Shown: positions 19,190 through 48,455 of the stretch, in pieces
Numbering within the stretch: position 1 is the stretch's first letter
Layout of the letters: every line of letters begins with the position of its first letter
Source of the DNA: Basidiobolus meristosporus CBS 931.73
Lineage: Eukaryota > Fungi > Basidiobolomycota
Assembly (NCBI GenBank): GCA_002104905.1
Contig: MCFE01000661.1
Location: 1-49,064 of the forward strand
Direction: 5' to 3'
Length of the DNA stretch: 49,064 nt
The notes under the pieces: generated by a model
The model's input: only the letters and a program-made list of their open reading frames with translations
Databases searched by the model: none
What the model was told of the DNA's origin: nothing
Translations under genes and position numbers: made by a program

Positions 19190-20544
19190 AGATAGAAGCG
19201 AGGCAAGAAAAAGGAAATTGGCTCGTTGGAGCAATACCTATACAAAGCTCCCAAATGAGTGATATGTTACAGAAGTGAGTTGCGTGCACGGCGGTTGAAC
19301 CGAAGCAGTATGGGAAATAACAAAGCGTTCCGTAAGAGAACCCTATTACGCTTTCACTAAATCACAACACGACGCAGCTAGCGGCGAAGAATTTAGGTCA
19401 CAATAGGTCCTAAATACAGCGATGGTTCAATATTAAGTCAAGAGCGGATAGAGATTATATTCCAAAAAGTATAGAGTGTATCTCCATATGAGTATGACAA
19501 ATGAACTTACCGTGTAACACAGGCACACAATAATAGGATATGTTCTATAAAAAGCAGTATCAGTGTCAAATAGATGGGTCAATGGCTAGCAAGATCTTGG
19601 GCGTGATTGTGTGTACCAGAATGTATTGCTGAGGTACTGTAAAATATATCGTGCGATCTCAGCTGACCCACAGGGGTCGGTGGTCTGCTACTGCAAACGC
19701 ACCTCAACCAGGGAAGGCCTTCGCGGACATTAACTTGATCAGTGTATGCTAGGGGCAGTCGCCCAAACTCAGGTGAAACTGGTGAAGAGCGCACGACGGA
19801 TAAAGCAAGTAATTCTGATTCTGATTGAAACTGACCTAGGGCTGCCAGTGAGGTCTCTGATGGCTTCCAATCAGCTGCCACAGTGCCCAGTTGGGAATCA
19901 CGGCTAGGTCTGCTATCTCTCCCATGAAACCAGCGCTGCATCAGCAAGTTTCCAATGGTTGCATTGATTACGTTTGCTAAATGAGTCCCATCATTCCTGC
20001 CAAATGCTTATCTTGAGCAGTTGGCAAGTAGGATCTCCAGGCGTGCTCTGGAATAGCGCCTGGCTCAACTTGCAGGATAATCAGATGATAATCCTGTGCA
20101 AGCCCCGAATCCCGTGACGATCGATGATCGGAGGCTCCATCGGGTTGCCACACACCATCCCTCATTACTGATCATGGCGTTCTGGGTGCGCGCGGTTGCA
20201 GCCACTCCCTTTAACATTCGGGCCTACGCAGCCTGCAATTCCACGCCCATACGTGCTGCTTGACGGTGTGTCCAAAGGGTTGCCAAAAAGCCGAGGATCA
20301 CTTTAATTTCTCAACATGGAAAACGCAACAGGGTCTCAACAAAACAAGTAATCAAGACGTGGAGATCGGAACAAGTCAAATCACAGAAATCAAAAGTCTT
20401 CAGCCTGAGATTCAGCTGCAAGATAGCAGGAAACCTTGCAGAACACCCATCAGATAAGTGCACATGCTGGCCAATATCCGCAACGCACCGGCTATCACAA
20501 AGCTATTGGGCCATCATGGGTTGCGAGTCTCTATTTAACAAAGA

Positions 20545-20564
20545 TCGGATCGGATCCGATCCGA
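20545..20564. repeat. Perfect 20-bp palindrome TCGGATCGGATCCGATCCGA
   Basis: Self-reverse-complementary; extends to 20541-20568 with one mismatched pair. Confidence 0.95.
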
Positions 20565-20574
20565 GCTTGTTGGG

Positions 20575-22653
20575 TTATCTGAATGAGTTTGCTTGGCAGA
20601 GGCGATGGCCAGCCGGTGACTTGGCCCGGACCTTATCAATTCGGGGCTGCGGTGCGGCAGAGACCCGGAAGACAATTCCAAGCAGCTCGTTGACTGCATT
20701 AAGCGTCGTTTGGGAGGTCCGACGGTTGACTGCTGGGGCGTAGTGCAGGTCTTTTGTGTGGGTGCTAGCTACTGGAAATAACGACAACAATGACTGGGCG
20801 GTGGGCTTCAATGCCTGGGATGTACACTCTGCGTTACTAGGAATGTATTTAACCATGGAAACGTAAGCAGTGCTGGGCGGGTTCCCGAGCACAACAGGTT
20901 GGGAATGCGACTTCGAACCAGACTGGCTATTGGAAACGCGTGGACCGGTTTCCCGTGATGGGTCTGTATTCGTGCCGGAAGAATCAGTAGTGGGGGACAT
21001 GAGAGTGGAGGAAATGCCAAGTAGTGACTTGATTTGATCTTCTGCATTGGCAGGTCGATTAGCAGCTGTTTCATTTGTCGATGGGTTGCATTTGGATCCC
21101 TCGGTAAATAACCGACTCTTTGGAGTGTTTTCGTATCGCAATTCATCTGGATTACCTGGCATCCGCATCAGATTAGATATCGATTGGTTTGAACTGGTCG
21201 GCGTTCCACTGTTTGGCCTTTGCTGGGTCGGATAAAAATGGTAGGATGGTGGAGGCTGTGCGATAGACTGTGGGGGTTTAGGGACCGATATCCTCAGCAT
21301 GGATTTCGGCATGTGGTCCGAAGCAGTTTCACCTGGTTGTCTATTGGCTGTACTGGGGGTGTGGTGCGGCTGGTCCCTAGGAGTATGACTGTCACCAGCC
21401 TGATGATCATGACCATCTCTTTGCCCATCTACCATGCCAAGTAGAGATTTAATCTGGTGCTCCGCAGTAGCCTGTGCGTCCACTGTCGATATCCCGGAAG
21501 AACTTCGAGAGGATTTTAATGAACTTAATTGCTTGCTGGATTTCCCACTGTGGTTGTGATTGATCCACCCCTTCAGTTTCCTTGTAGAAGCTGGGGGTTA
21601 ATATCACCCTGATGTGCAGATTGGCGTAACAAAGCTTACGAAACAAAAGTAATGATCATATAGTATCGGTTTGTGGACTTTGCAACTTGCCCGGCCTCAA
21701 AGAGGTCAGCAAGGCCAGATTTAGCTCTGGATGCAGAAAGGCCCGAGATCTTATGCCACTCTATTTTCTAAATCCAACAAGGTTTGTATATCACGCGTAG
21801 TATGCGGAGTCGCGCAGCTTACACTGGTCTCCTTTCGCGTCAAAGGAATAAATACGGTTTTTTCGGGAACACCGGCGGCAATGAAGAGCTTGATTCTTTG
21901 TTCGTGAATGACGACCTCAATGAACTGTTTATCCTGGATATAAGGACTAATATCAAACCCGGTCTCCTCCAGAACCTGTTCAACCGAGTAGGTTTTGTCA
22001 GTTAAGGGCCAGACTGGGTAGTGAGGAATAGTTATTGATACCTCACGGATGGCGCAAGTGGAATCCTGCTCGTCCTTGTTGATTTTGCCTCTAGGAAATC
22101 CCCAACCAGACCGTGAAGTCCAGCCTTTCACAAGAAGGCACTAGTGTTTGGTCACTATAACTGTTGTAGGCGAATCGAGCGGGCGAAATGCTAATACCTT
22201 ATCCAACTTTTCGTTCAATATAATGGCACCGCAAACAGGCACCCGGAATTTGTATTGTAAAAAATCATTGTACGCCTTTTCATGCTCGTTAGCCCAATGG
22301 TGTAGTAATGAGCAATGCTGAAAAAGTAGCACTCGTTAAGGAAAACACTTTCGTGATAATGTTATGGGTATGAAAACATCATCGTAAAGGATGTTTTTCG
22401 CCGAGAAATTTCTGAGAGAGAACATGGGTAAGGCAGAGTTAATCTCTCTGACGAAGTCCTCGTAGAACCAGTGAGCTTGCTCAATCTGAAAGCAGATACG
22501 CGCAACTGAAGCAAGCTCCTCGTCCGGCACATTGATGATGAACCGGCTTCGAAACATCAGTTAGAACATTTGCACGCATTTATCCACGCGTTGGCAAGCG
22601 AACCTGCATAGATCGTCTAGAATCTCGGATAACGAGGTTTGCTCAAAATACAT
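20575..22653 (-). CDS. DCP2: mRNA decapping enzyme Dcp2 (BoxA + Nudix + disordered tail), 7 exons
   Basis: MYFEQTSLSEILDDLCSRFIINVPDEEL...ICFQIEQAHWFYEDF, YKFRVPVCGAIILN, and the Nudix box WGFPRGKINKDEQDSTCAIRE|VLEETGF; KIEWH, KLKGWI. Confidence 0.96.
22326..22394 (-). other. U12-type (minor spliceosome) intron in DCP2 with AC...AC termini
   Basis: 5' end ACATCCTTTAC; branch site TTTTCCTTAACG; 3' end GCTAC. Removal restores NFSAK-I-FQHCSLL, whereas retention hits an in-frame TAA. Confidence 0.8.
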
Positions 22654-24019
22654 ATCTTATCTGAGGGTAATAAAATTGTTTATTGCAAGTCAGGAAGGCT
22701 GTGTAGTGGTAATAACAAAAGTAATAGGGCCGAGGTCGAATAAGCGCCATGGTGAGAGAGTAGTCATTCGCAGTTTATCAGCCAGACTGCTTTGAAGACA
22801 CTTCATGTTTGTCCCAAACCTGGATATTCGGTCCCAATAGGCGGAATACCGTCAAAGAACACAGTGTTCCAGTATTCTCTGCTACTGGCTCAAATGCAAC
22901 AATCACAGACTCTAGATAGTTGAAGAAATCAAGATCCAAGTAATCTGGAGGATGAGTGAAACACCTTGCCAAGTATGCATTTGATTCTGCAATGATTCAG
23001 CTTGTCTTACTACTTCACCAGTCGCCAATGTGCGTTCAGTAGGATTTTGTTTAGCAATCTACCACTCAGAAGCACCACTGGTTTCATTGTGCGTTGTGCA
23101 CAGATACCTCTCTGCGAGAGGGGCAGTTTAGGAAATGGATACCACATAGTATGTGCCAGCTAATATCTTACATGCATGTTCAGCAGTATCAAAGCTCGAA
23201 TGCGGCGTGCAGACACTGACAAAGTAGGTGGGTAGTGTCGGGATTAATGGAAATAACAATACAAGCTACTGTTAGGTTTGGCTGAACTTCGAAAGAGCCG
23301 CACTTGAAACGACACGATCAGCCACACAACTTGATTCAGTATCGATCTTTTGAATGTTAAAGAAAGTTTTGGAACATTCGACAGTAACATATGTTCCCGT
23401 GAACCGCAGGAAACAAAGTGCTTGTTTCGGTATATTGGGAAAAGCTAGATCCAGTACCCTTGGAAGCCAGTCGGTCGAATACAGGGTCGTTGCTTGGCGG
23501 CAGACAAGCTATGCTGCACGACATAGCCTAACTGCAAGTAAGCGGACTTAATTAAATATCCAAGAGCGCTCGAAATGGGGTCGTCCATTGTTTGTCCAGA
23601 GAGATGGCGGGGATGTCTACACCCAAGAGACACCTGAATGCTTCCAGCCTGGTGTGATTGAGCTGAGGGGAGATCTTTTGTATTACCCGAGTTAAAAGAT
23701 CAACAACCATCCTTGTGATAGTTCAACCGCGCTTTGGATGGCTTGTTCTAGGAATGATGTCATGCGGCATGCTTCTCAAAACTCCATTAAGAGCGACAGA
23801 ATTGGGATGGTTGAAATCGCTAAGGGACCTGGTGTATAATATCCATCGAAATGACAAATCTTTTGATCGTGTATTGATGATATCTGGAAAATTTATAGCA
23901 GTAATGGTAATTGCTGACTCAGGAACCAGCCGCCTGTCGTTCGTGTATTTCTAGTATAACACAACCTGTTCATACCTACGTCAATTCACAATCTTTTAAG
24001 CTACTTCTTGATAGCCACC

Positions 24020-46159: not shown

Positions 46160-48455
46160 TCCACCCCCCTCTCAGCTTTGAACTTGGGTCAAAGCAAACT
46201 AATCTTGATGTGCAAAATTCCTATGCTTGAATAACTTAAGTCAATTTCCAGCAACTGGTGCTCTCAACTGGGTGTTGTCAAGCGCAGATATGTAATAACT
46301 TCCATTTCCAATCACTTTGGAAATGAGGTAGGGGCCAGTCCATTTGTTGTCAAACTTCCAACTCCATTGCTTTTCAAGGTAGAATCATAGAGTAATACTG
46401 GGTCTCCTAGTGATAGTGGTTTTGGTCTTGTTGGGTGTGATTTGTCAAAGGGCACCTTGTTCTTTAGTTGTGTATCCTTAAGTTGGTCAGCAGCTCTGCT
46501 AATATTCAAGTCATGGTGATCAAGTTGCTGTATGCAAGTTGCAAGGAGGTCTTCAGTCTGCATATTGGATCTCCAATTCAATGAGTTCCAAGTGATTGTG
46601 TTTAACTCAACTGGTAGTATGCAGTCATGTCCATAGAGTAGCTTGAATGGCAATAATCCAGTTGTTCTCTTGGTAGTAATGCTATCTGCCCAGAGTGCTA
46701 GATGTAATTGCTGTGGCCACAGTGTGGTGTTATTCTCACAAGTCTTGACAAGAGAGTTCACCAATGGTCCATGTCCTCTCTCTATCATTCCATTGGCTTG
46801 AGGGTGGTAAGCTGTTGTGAAAGCTATGTGTATCTTGTACTTTGAGCACAACTCCTGGATCATCTGGGATGTCATCTCTCCTCTGTCAGCAACAAACTGT
46901 TGGATGTAGCCAAATCTACAGATGATGTCTTCAAGTATAAATCTCCATATGGTATGGCTCTTGTTGTTGGGCAAGGCTCAAGCCTCTGCCCATCCACTAA
47001 GGTCATCTCTAGCAACAATCAGGTACTTTTTTGATCCAGCTGATGGCATGTGGACAAGGTCAATACCAACCTTTTGCCATAGACAGATTGTGTAAGTAGG
47101 ATGCAGTGGTTCTTCATAACGCTTAGAGGATCTCTTCTGGCAGGCTACACATGACTCAACAAAGTGCTGGATATCATAGTACATGTTTTCCCAGTAGTAC
47201 CTCTGAGCTGTGGTATTGTAGGTGGCTTCTTGTCCTCTATGTCCTCCTGGTTCTCCTTGGTGGATACTTGTCATCATGTTCAGTTGCTCTTGAGGGGTAG
47301 TGACTACTCTTCTTGGCATAAGTCCAGGCTTCACTTGCTTAAAGAGAAGATCATCTTTAAGATAGTAGTGATGTGCCTTCTTCCTGAGTTTTCTAAGCGC
47401 CTGAATTTCCATCCAACTAGGTTATTTAAGTGTCCTTAGATAATCCTTGATCAGACTCCAGGTAGTTCTCTCTTGGTCCTTGATGGCAATCTGTCAGATC
47501 TCTGCATCAATAATATCATCAAAGTGAGGGTCCAAGTCTTCAAATAATTGTGGTCCCTTCCTGGAGAGTGCATCAGCCACAACATTTGTCTTGCCAGGGA
47601 TATGTTTGACCTCAAAGTCAAACATTTTCAGCCATGCCATCCATCAGTTTGTGGCATCATCAGGTAGGTCAGGCTTGTTAATCATTCCTATAAGTGGCTT
47701 GGCATCTGTCTCCAGGATAAAATGTGTCATGTAGAGTTGTGACTTCAGTTTCCTCAGCATCTTCACAACTCCTAGTAGTTCTCTCTTAATCTGTGAGTAT
47801 CTTTGCTCTCTAGGAGAGAATAGGCAGCTCTCATATCTGCAGGCATAGCGGTTGCCATCTTCATCATCTTGTCCAAGTAGTGCTCCAGCTCCTATAGGGC
47901 TTGCATCCACTGTCAAAATAGGTGGGCATTCAGTGTTTTGATAGTCAAGAGGTCTTAGAACTGGTGGAGATACTAAGGCCACTTTCAGTAATTGCATGGC
48001 TTCTTCTTGCTCTTCTCCCAGATAAATGGGGTATTCTTTCTCTGTAGTTGGTAGATTGGTTCTGCTATCTCAGAAAATCTTGGGATCCAGATCCTAAAGA
48101 ACCCACAAGCAGCCACAAAGCCACAAGCTTGTGTGAGATTTGTGGGGGTAGGCCAGTTGCGTATCTTTTGTGTCTTGGAGTCTCCAGGTGAATGACCAAA
48201 GGTATTGCATTTTTGTCCAACAATGGATATCTCTGATACACCAAAGCTGCTTTTCTCACCACTGATGGTGAGTCCAGCTTCTTCAATGGCTCCTAATATG
48301 GCATCATTGTCTACAATATGGTCATAGACAAACTTTCTTACTCCAGGCATAACTTCAGGGGTGTCCCGGAATTTTGGTCCTTTGATGCCTATGTCATCCA
48401 CAAAGACAGCAAGTTTCTCAGGTATAAACTGATACAGCACATTAGACTTGTTCCA
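46160..48455 (-). mobile_element. Ty3/gypsy pol (RT, RNase H, H2C2, integrase core, GPY), decayed and 5'-truncated
   Basis: VFVDDIGIKGP, LTVDASPIGAGALL, RYSQIKRELLG, HRGQEAT...C..CQKR, TTAYHPQANGMIERGH, KWTGPY. Stops and frameshifts present. Confidence 0.95.

What the first reader, a model, noticed from the sequence alone, without database searches (positions are those of the whole stretch)
22326..22394. Minor-spliceosome intron with non-canonical AC...AC ends in DCP2
Seen (minus strand): exon ...TCG GCG AAA A | ACATCCTTTACGATG ... GTGTTTTCCTTAACGAGTGCTAC | TT TTT CAG CAT TGC. Removing these 69 nt gives LRNFSAKIFQHCSLL, the expected BoxA continuation. Retention meets an in-frame TAA, and I see no GT donor that restores the frame. 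Established: U12 introns have a 5' RTATCCTTT, a TTCCTTAAC branch site close to the 3' end, and AT-AC or GT-AG ends; most fungi have lost the minor spliceosome. Here everything fits the AT-AC class except +2, which is C instead of T, analogous to GC-AG among major introns. Inference: either a rare functional AC-AC U12 intron, possibly a slow-splicing throttle on decapping, or a defective allele or base error. Either way it implies a minor spliceosome in this lineage.
Basis: partly seen in the sequence, partly recalled or inferred. Interest (0 to 1): 0.8.

Follow-up and report, generated by a model that had tools for sequence, protein, structure and literature searches.

The report
Mutated minor-spliceosome intron in DCP2
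A 69-base intron in one copy of the decapping-enzyme gene DCP2 of a Basidiobolus fungus matches an old, conserved minor-spliceosome (U12, AT-AC) intron, but its second base has changed from T to C; this is more likely a weakened splice site in a spare, decaying gene copy than a new working intron class.

Summary
On the minus strand, 22394-22326 interrupts DCP2 Box A. It starts ACATCCTTT, carries a perfect TTCCTTAAC branch site 10 nt before a terminal AC, and meets an in-frame TAA if retained. Removing these 69 nt makes the Pfam Box A profile continuous.

Twelve distinct relatives carry a U12 intron at the same codon and phase. They include syntenic Basidiobolus ranarum, Calcarisporiella, Rhizopus, Cunninghamella, Mycotypha and seven metagenome fungi. 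All twelve start ATATCC and end AC, so the +2 C here is derived. Independent contigs from the source sample (about 155x depth) show the same base.

The "implies a minor spliceosome" claim is correct but already published: B. meristosporus has 237-249 minor introns and U11/U12/U6atac genes.

Whether AC-AC is spliced could not be tested, because no RNA run was reachable. This copy also has a 5-nt tandem duplication that frameshifts a conserved C-terminal motif, and it has lost conserved prolines. A second DCP2 paralogue exists, and that paralogue appears as a spliced cDNA-like contig.

My odds:
- Crippled or leaky donor in a redundant copy: about 0.5.
- Working AC-AC intron: about 0.3.
- Alternative splice sites: about 0.12.
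- Sequencing error: about 0.03.

Earlier notes of this scan found several ordinary AT-AC introns in this genome.

The parts
22326..22394 (-). Putative U12-type intron, 69 nt, with AC...AC ends. It corresponds to the conserved AT-AC intron in DCP2 Box A.
   Evidence: for the window; orthologous introns.
22386..22394 (-). 5' splice-site motif ACATCCTTT. It matches the consensus RTATCCTTT at 8 of 9 positions; +2 (22393) is C instead of T.
   Evidence: All 12 relatives have ATATCC here.
22335..22343 (-). Branch-site motif TTCCTTAAC, a perfect U12 consensus. The presumed branch A at 22336 lies 10 nt from the 3' junction.
22326..22327 (-). 3' terminal dinucleotide AC.
   Evidence: It has the same spacing after the branch site as in Rhizopus L085, metagenome L029 and Calcarisporiella L088.
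22395..22546 (-). DCP2 exon 2, the first part of Box A (RFIINVPDEEL...RNFSAK).
   Evidence: Pfam PF05026, E = 4.9e-22, profile positions 8-58. Also.
22198..22325 (-). DCP2 exon 3, the end of Box A ((I)FQHCSLLHHW...NEKLDK).
   Evidence: (profile positions 58-83).
20535..22653 (-). The whole DCP2 gene (copy A). ATG is at 22653. GT-AG introns lie at 22603-22547, 22197-22141, 22041-21976, 21822-21768 and 21639-21581, with a probable one at 20673-20592.
   Evidence: Collinear with the B. ranarum DCP2 locus L089.
22318..22377 (-). Rival in-frame GT-AG intron (GTTTTC...CAG, 60 nt). It would give FSAKNILYDDHCSLL, 3 residues longer than every relative.
20535..20577 (-). C-terminal lesion. A 5-nt tandem GATCC-type duplication near 20543-20547 shifts the frame, so the conserved end ...SSDQI(R/K)(S/A)LLN.DS.PMMAQ* cannot be read in one frame. 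The result is either ...SSDRIRSDLC* or an in-frame TAA at 20577-20575.
   Evidence: B. ranarum; X4 lacks 5 letters at 20543; reconstruction.

Best explanation
The 69 nt correspond to an ancient AT-AC U12-type intron that splits the same Box A codon of DCP2 across early-diverging fungi. In this gene copy the invariant +2 T has mutated to C, giving AC-AC. Everything else the minor spliceosome needs is intact: ATCCTTT at +3 to +9, the TTCCTTAAC branch site, and a terminal AC 10 nt downstream. Recognition by the U11/U12 di-snRNP should therefore still occur. Position +2 is contacted by U11-48K and is needed in catalysis, so I infer that splicing is weak or abolished. The genome tolerates this because a second DCP2 paralogue (B) supplies the enzyme. 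Copy A appears to be sliding towards a hypomorph or pseudogene. Shown: the homology of the intron, the derived state of the C, the reality of the base, the second lesion and the existence of the paralogue. Inferred: the loss of splicing efficiency and the redundancy.
For: (1) Same position and phase, with ATATCC...AC, in 12 of 12 distinct relatives: L001, L002, L005, L006, L029, L063 and L069; Rhizopus stolonifer, Cunninghamella and Mycotypha; Calcarisporiella (where the public model splices AT-AC); and syntenic Basidiobolus ranarum. (2) AC-AC is 1 of about 73,700 conserved animal minor introns and none in plants (PMC10639083 Table S1). From memory, the abstract of Dietrich et al. 2005 (RNA 11:1430) says most +2 mutants of a U12 5' site were splicing-defective; I could not read the paper. 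(3) U+2 cross-links to SNRNP48/U11-48K (bioRxiv 10.1101/2023.12.22.573053). (4) A second derived lesion in the same copy is a 5-nt duplication that frameshifts a C-terminal motif conserved between B. ranarum and the X4 relative. (5) At sites where eight outgroups agree, the window has 7 unique replacements, including HCPLL>HCSLL, YMIIPF>YMIITF and DLP>GLS, against 4 in B. ranarum. (6) One search shows a paralogue B in runs X1-X4 at 1.7-2 times the depth of copy A. In X3 the B contig has 406 letters where B genomic contigs have 600, and it joins exon 3 directly to exon 4, so it is cDNA-like. The copy-A contigs of X3 run unspliced through introns 3-6 at about a tenth of that depth.
Against: Except for +2, every splicing signal is perfect, and all other GT-AG introns and the catalytic exons are intact. 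dN/dS against B. ranarum is 0.047 over the N-terminal half, so any decay must be recent. The relative-rate excess is not significant (7 vs 4, p = 0.55). A C at +2 is tolerated in U12 GC-AG introns such as LZTR1 (PMC1557818). The C-terminal frameshift removes only about 12 residues and may be harmless. The X3 'RNA' reading is my inference from contig geometry: the run is labelled 'DNA?', and contigs cannot prove that spliced copy-A mRNA is absent.
Confidence: 0.5

Rival explanations
1. AC-AC is a working, if slow, U12-type intron. The minor spliceosome cleaves before A22394 and after C22326 and yields the consensus protein ...FSAK-IFQ-HCSLL..., much as GC-AG introns work despite a C at +2.
For: Splicing at exactly these ends restores the Box A profile and the conserved spacing and Phe seen in all relatives. 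The +3 to +9 motif, branch site and spacing are perfect. The junction sequence AAA A|...AC|TT TTT CAG CAT TGC is the same as in Calcarisporiella, where the AT-AC splice is in the public model. U12 GC-AG introns exist and are conserved between human and mouse. One AC-AC case sits among conserved animal minor introns. The catalytic half of the gene shows strong purifying selection.
Against: No RNA evidence exists. All 12 orthologous introns keep T at +2. AC-AC is essentially unrecorded in surveys. The same copy has other derived damage and a paralogue that could cover for it.
Confidence: 0.3
2. The transcript is rescued through other splice sites. One option is a U2-type GT-AG intron 22377-22318 (GTTTTC...CAG, 60 nt, using CTTAAC as branch), which gives FSAKNILYDDHCSLL. 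Another is a shifted AT(22392)-AG(22318) excision, which gives FSAKNHCSLL.
For: Both options keep the frame with no stop. A 60-nt length and a weak donor are normal for this gene: intron 1 uses GTTCGC, and the introns are 55-66 nt. TTAAC lies 18 nt before the CAG and fits a fungal branch site. Conversion of U12 introns to U2 type is a known evolutionary route (PMC1557818).
Against: The products differ in length (+3 or -2 residues) from every relative and lose the conserved Phe of FSAK-x-F-x-HC. GTTTTC is a poor donor. A 2-nt shift of the U12 cleavage site is out of register with the ATCCTT pairing.
Confidence: 0.12
3. The C at 22393 is a sequencing or assembly error and the real intron is an ordinary AT-AC.
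For: It is a single-base difference from an otherwise universal consensus.
Against: Logan contigs assembled independently from runs X1 and X2, at about 155x k-mer depth, match the window with 0 differences over 20500-23500. They may, however, come from the same sample as the assembly.
Confidence: 0.03

Closest known systems
The orthologous AT-AC U12 intron of DCP2 in Basidiobolus ranarum (L089; protein KAK-type model P0202) and Calcarisporiella thermophila (XP_069246246)
   Same: Same codon and phase (after the first base of the codon following FSAK/FSKK). Same 5' ATCCTTT core, a CCTTAAC branch site and a terminal AC. In Calcarisporiella the flanking exon bases are also the same.
   Different: Those introns start AT and are spliced in public gene models. 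Here +2 is C, the intron is shorter (69 nt against 98 and about 140), and splicing is unproven.
U12-type GC-AG introns (for example human and mouse LZTR1; Sheth et al. 2006, PMC1557818)
   Same: A minor-spliceosome intron with C instead of T at +2 and an otherwise consensus 5' site. This shows that the minor spliceosome can tolerate a C at +2.
   Different: Those have G at +1 and AG at the 3' end. The A-start class with C at +2 is almost unrecorded (1 in about 73,700).
Known non-canonical U12 termini (AT-AA, AT-AT, AT-AG, GT-AT, GT-GG)
   Same: They differ by a single base from a canonical pair and keep the extended 5' motif and branch site.
   Different: Nearly all known variants change the 3' end or +1. 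This one changes +2 of an AT-AC intron.
Catalogued minor introns of Basidiobolus meristosporus (249 in Larue & Roy 2023; 237 in Olthof et al. 2024)
   Same: Same genome lineage according to earlier scan notes, and the same short AT-AC-style architecture.
   Different: Annotation-based catalogues are unlikely to contain an AC-AC intron. I could not check whether this one is listed.

Membership tests
U12-type (minor spliceosome) intron | Extended 5' splice-site motif, intron positions +3 to +9 = ATCCTTT | tested here: met
   ACATCCTTT at 22394-22386; 7 of 7 at +3 to +9.
U12-type (minor spliceosome) intron | Terminal dinucleotides AT-AC or GT-AG (or a recorded non-canonical pair) | tested here: not met
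   The ends are AC-AC. AC-AC is 1 of about 73,700 in PMC10639083 Table S1 and is absent from the other surveys searched.
U12-type (minor spliceosome) intron | Branch-site consensus TCCTTAAC about 10-15 nt upstream of the 3' junction | tested here: met
   TTCCTTAAC at 22343-22335, with the branch A 10 nt from the last intron base.
U12-type (minor spliceosome) intron | The orthologous position is occupied by U12-type introns in related species | tested here: met
   12 of 12 distinct relatives that have an intron at this position carry ATATCC...AC there.
U12-type (minor spliceosome) intron | Actually excised at these ends in RNA | not testable with these tools
   No RNA run holds the stretch. The only cDNA-like contig belongs to paralogue B and ends exactly at the exon 3 / U12 junction.
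U12-type (minor spliceosome) intron | Minor snRNAs (U11, U12, U4atac, U6atac) present in the genome | not tested
   None lie in this 49-kb window, and the rest of the genome was not available. Literature reports U11, U12, U6atac and a divergent U4atac in B. meristosporus (PMC11347168).
DCP2 mRNA-decapping enzyme | Box A domain followed by a Nudix fold | tested here: met
   PF05026 at E = 4.9e-22 on exon 2. The Nudix exons are near-identical to B. ranarum DCP2 over 230 codons. The single-ORF Nudix hit (19.5 bits) is below Pfam's cutoff only because the domain is split by introns.
Functional (non-pseudogene) DCP2 copy | Intact reading frame to the conserved C-terminus, and conserved residues kept | tested here: inconclusive
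   The catalytic half is intact, with dN/dS 0.047. Against this, the C-terminal motif is frameshifted relative to X4 and B. ranarum, and several conserved prolines are replaced.

The most novel reading that the evidence does not exclude
AC-AC is a genuinely spliced terminal pair for the minor spliceosome in Basidiobolus. It would be the A-start counterpart of GC-AG, and a natural demonstration that U at +2 is dispensable when the rest of the 5' motif and the branch site are perfect. It might also impose slow splicing on one DCP2 paralogue.
Probability: 0.3. Interest if true: 0.55.

Novelty: new member of a known kind. Interest (0 to 1): 0.3.

Why it matters
If AC-AC is spliced, it would be a clean natural test of how much the minor spliceosome needs U at +2. 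The case is well controlled, with twelve AT-AC orthologues of the same intron for comparison. If it is not spliced, it shows how a gene duplicate starts to die through a single splice-site transition in a rare intron class.

There is also a practical lesson that holds either way. This conserved U12 intron breaks automated gene models. DCP2 is split into two genes in the public annotations of Rhizopus stolonifer, Cunninghamella blakesleeana and Mycotypha africana, and it is mis-spliced in other models.

The presence of a minor spliceosome in this lineage is not news.

Tried and rejected
RNA and read evidence:
- The look-up of sequencing runs gave no RNA holder.
- The single read-laying run covered the X4 relative across the intron, but its table of base differences was cut before 22393.

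Searches for closer Basidiobolus relatives:
- A search with the 340-aa C-terminal exon found nothing.
- The 73-aa exon-2 ORF found no Basidiobolus fragment.
- The full-library representative search returned no identical or near-identical Basidiobolus protein.
- Only the search seeded with Calcarisporiella DCP2 found B. ranarum.
- Paralogue B's own 5' splice site could not be retrieved.

snRNAs and other candidates in the window:
- Rfam on the window found no snRNA, which is expected for 49 kb.
- The other ACATCCTTT and GCATCCTTT matches, and the one GTATCCTT at 46472, have no branch site at the right distance and are not U12 introns.

Literature:
- Dietrich et al. 2005 could not be read and is cited from memory only.

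Tests that were not informative:
- The relative-rate test was not significant.

Steps left out on purpose:
Exons were searched separately by reference. In-frame splice options were enumerated only locally, and only short peptide snippets were printed.

Full report
**What is in the sequence.** On the minus strand the window carries a DCP2 gene. ATG is at 22653, and ordinary GT-AG introns lie at 22603-22547, 22197-22141, 22041-21976, 21822-21768 and 21639-21581. Between exon 2 (22546-22395) and exon 3 (22325-22198) lie 69 nt, 22394-22326. They begin ACATCCTTTAC, contain TTCCTTAAC at 22343-22335 and end ...GAGTGCTAC. The second A of the branch motif is 10 nt from the last intron base. Read through, the frame gives FSAKNILYDD... 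and stops at the TAA inside the branch motif. Pfam's Box A model matches profile positions 8-58 in the exon-2 ORF and 58-83 in the exon-3 ORF. The domain is therefore continuous only if about 69 nt are removed.

**Is the base real?** Logan contigs assembled from runs X1 and X2, at k-mer depth about 155, cover 20500-23500 with no differences and no gaps. These runs may be the source sample, so they exclude an assembly slip but are not an independent isolate.

**What it corresponds to.** Short ORFs and truncated gene models from many Mucoromycota and Glomeromycota end in FSAK/R followed by NILF or YILF, which is a read-through of A|ATATCCTTT or T|ATATCCTTT. At DNA level I examined twelve distinct relatives:
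- seven metagenome fungi: L001, L002, L005, L006, L029, L063 and L069;
- Rhizopus stolonifer, Cunninghamella blakesleeana and Mycotypha africana;
- Calcarisporiella thermophila;
- Basidiobolus ranarum.

All twelve have an intron after the first base of the same codon. In all twelve it begins ATATCC and ends AC, usually with a CCTTAAC-like branch site shortly before the end. In Calcarisporiella the flanking exon bases (AAA A | ... | TT TTT CAG CAT TGC) are the same as in the window, and the public model splices AT-AC to give FSKKIFQHCPLL. The B. ranarum locus is collinear with the window from DCP2 into the downstream PH-domain gene, and its model also splices the AT-AC intron to give FSAKIFKHCPLL. 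The window's intron is therefore an orthologue of an old, conserved AT-AC U12 intron, and the C at +2 is a derived T-to-C transition. Some relatives (L003, L004, L007-L009) have lost the intron altogether.

**Alternatives for excision.** I enumerated locally every GT/GC/AT/AC donor and AG/AC acceptor pair that keeps the frame.
- AC(22394)-AC(22326) gives FSAK-IFQ-HCSLL. Only this pairing reproduces the spacing and the conserved Phe of all relatives.
GTTTTC at 22377 joined to CAG at 22318 (60 nt) gives FSAKNILYDDHCSLL, which is three residues longer.
- AT(22392)-AG(22318) gives FSAKNHCSLL.

The last two remain possible rescue routes, but each yields a protein unlike any relative.

**What is known.** Earlier notes of this scan name the genome Basidiobolus meristosporus. 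My own evidence is only that the nearest syntenic locus is B. ranarum, at about 67% DNA identity.
- B. meristosporus is published as minor-intron-rich: 249 introns, 0.554% of all introns (PMC10639083).
- A second survey reports 237 minor introns, with U11, U12 and U6atac genes and a divergent U4atac (PMC11347168). The "minor spliceosome in this lineage" inference is therefore right but not new.
- AC-AC appears once among about 73,700 conserved animal minor introns and never in plants (Table S1 of PMC10639083).
- AC-AC is not mentioned in the other surveys I searched.
- C at +2 does occur in U12 GC-AG introns such as LZTR1.
- U+2 cross-links to U11-48K and lies outside the U11 base-pairing stretch.
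- From memory only, since the paper was not held: Dietrich et al. 2005 reported most +2 mutants as splicing-defective.

**Is this copy healthy?** Against B. ranarum, synonymous sites are saturated (pS 0.71) and dN/dS is 0.047 over the Box A/Nudix half. The gene has therefore been constrained for most of its history. The window copy nevertheless shows derived oddities.
- At sites where eight outgroups agree, it has 7 unique replacements against 4 in B. ranarum. The difference is not significant (p = 0.55). The replacements include HCPLL>HCSLL, YMIIPF>YMIITF and DLP>GLS.
- At the C-terminus, B. ranarum ends ...SSDQIKALLNIDSKPMMAQ*. The X4 relative, rebuilt from the differences listed, reads ...SDNPASSDQIRSLLN... 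in one frame.
- The window has five extra bases in a GATCC tandem repeat near 20543. The frame therefore ends ...SSDRIRSDLC*. In the frame of the long ORF, it instead meets a TAA at 20577-20575, with the conserved motif stranded downstream.

**A paralogue.** One search also shows a second DCP2 (B), about 84% identical in exons, in X1, X2, X3 and X4. It sits at 1.7-2 times the depth of copy A in the DNA runs.
- Between the anchors 22145 and 22445, B has 325 letters against 299 in copy A, so it keeps an intron at the U12 position too.
- In X3 the B contig has 406 letters where the genomic B contigs have 600 between the same anchors. The difference is about the summed length of introns 4-6.
- The loose end of that contig joins exon 3 (...GAIILNEAQDK) directly to exon 4. 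X3 is labelled "DNA?", which is a guess by the tool, and I infer that it holds cDNA.
- The spliced B contig stops exactly 128 nt upstream of exon 4, which is the exon 3 / U12-intron junction. This is where a de Bruijn contig would break if spliced and retained forms coexist.
- Copy A appears in X3 only as short contigs that run unspliced through introns 3-6, at about a tenth of B's depth.
- This evidence is weak, because contigs cannot prove absence. It does point to B as the working gene.

**Verdict.** The feature is real and is a U12-type intron by position, motif and homology. Its AC 5' end is a lineage-specific mutation of a conserved AT.

| Reading | Probability |
|---|---|
| Crippled or leaky donor in a redundant, slowly decaying paralogue | about 0.5 |
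| AC-AC is a working terminal pair | about 0.3 |
| Rescue through the GT-AG or shifted sites | about 0.12 |
| Base error | about 0.03 |

Junction reads for copy A, or the homologous base in the X4 strain, would decide between these readings.

Noticed in passing
window 20535-20577 (minus strand): The DCP2 C-terminus is frameshifted by a 5-nt tandem duplication (GATCC-type repeat near 20543-20547) relative to the X4 relative and B. ranarum. The conserved terminal motif ...LLN.DS.PMMAQ* is still recognisable but out of frame, or lies behind an in-frame TAA at 20577-20575.
   Followed up: partly
window 20592-20673 (minus strand): A probable 82-nt GT-AG intron (GTCTTC...CCAAG) is needed to link the long exon frame to the frame of ...SDNPTSSD.... 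X4 is unalignable over 20614-20671. B. ranarum has continuous coding sequence at the equivalent place.
   Followed up: partly
runs X1-X4 laid on window 21419-22635: A second DCP2 paralogue (about 84% identical in exons) is present in all four runs at 1.7-2 times the depth of this copy. In X3 it appears as a spliced, cDNA-like contig that ends exactly at the exon 3 / U12-intron junction, which hints at partial retention of its own U12 intron.
   Followed up: partly
L085 (Rhizopus stolonifer), L086 (Cunninghamella blakesleeana), L087 (Mycotypha africana): Public annotations split DCP2 into two separate gene models, a Box A piece of 76-97 aa and a Nudix piece of 180-327 aa, exactly at this AT-AC intron. 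Other models (P0043 Actinomortierella wolfii, P0058, P0060, P0086) read into it or around it.
   Followed up: partly
L003, L004, L007, L008, L009: Close DCP2 relatives from a Logan assembly of a public sequencing run (L003) and from metagenomes (L004, L007-L009) have no intron at this position (continuous FSAKFFQHCPLL in the DNA), while L003 and L004 at least keep the next GT-AG intron. This is loss of the U12 intron in some lineages.
   Followed up: no
window 46472-46479 (plus strand): This is the only canonical GTATCCTT in the window. No U12 branch motif follows it, so it is probably not an intron signal.
   Followed up: yes
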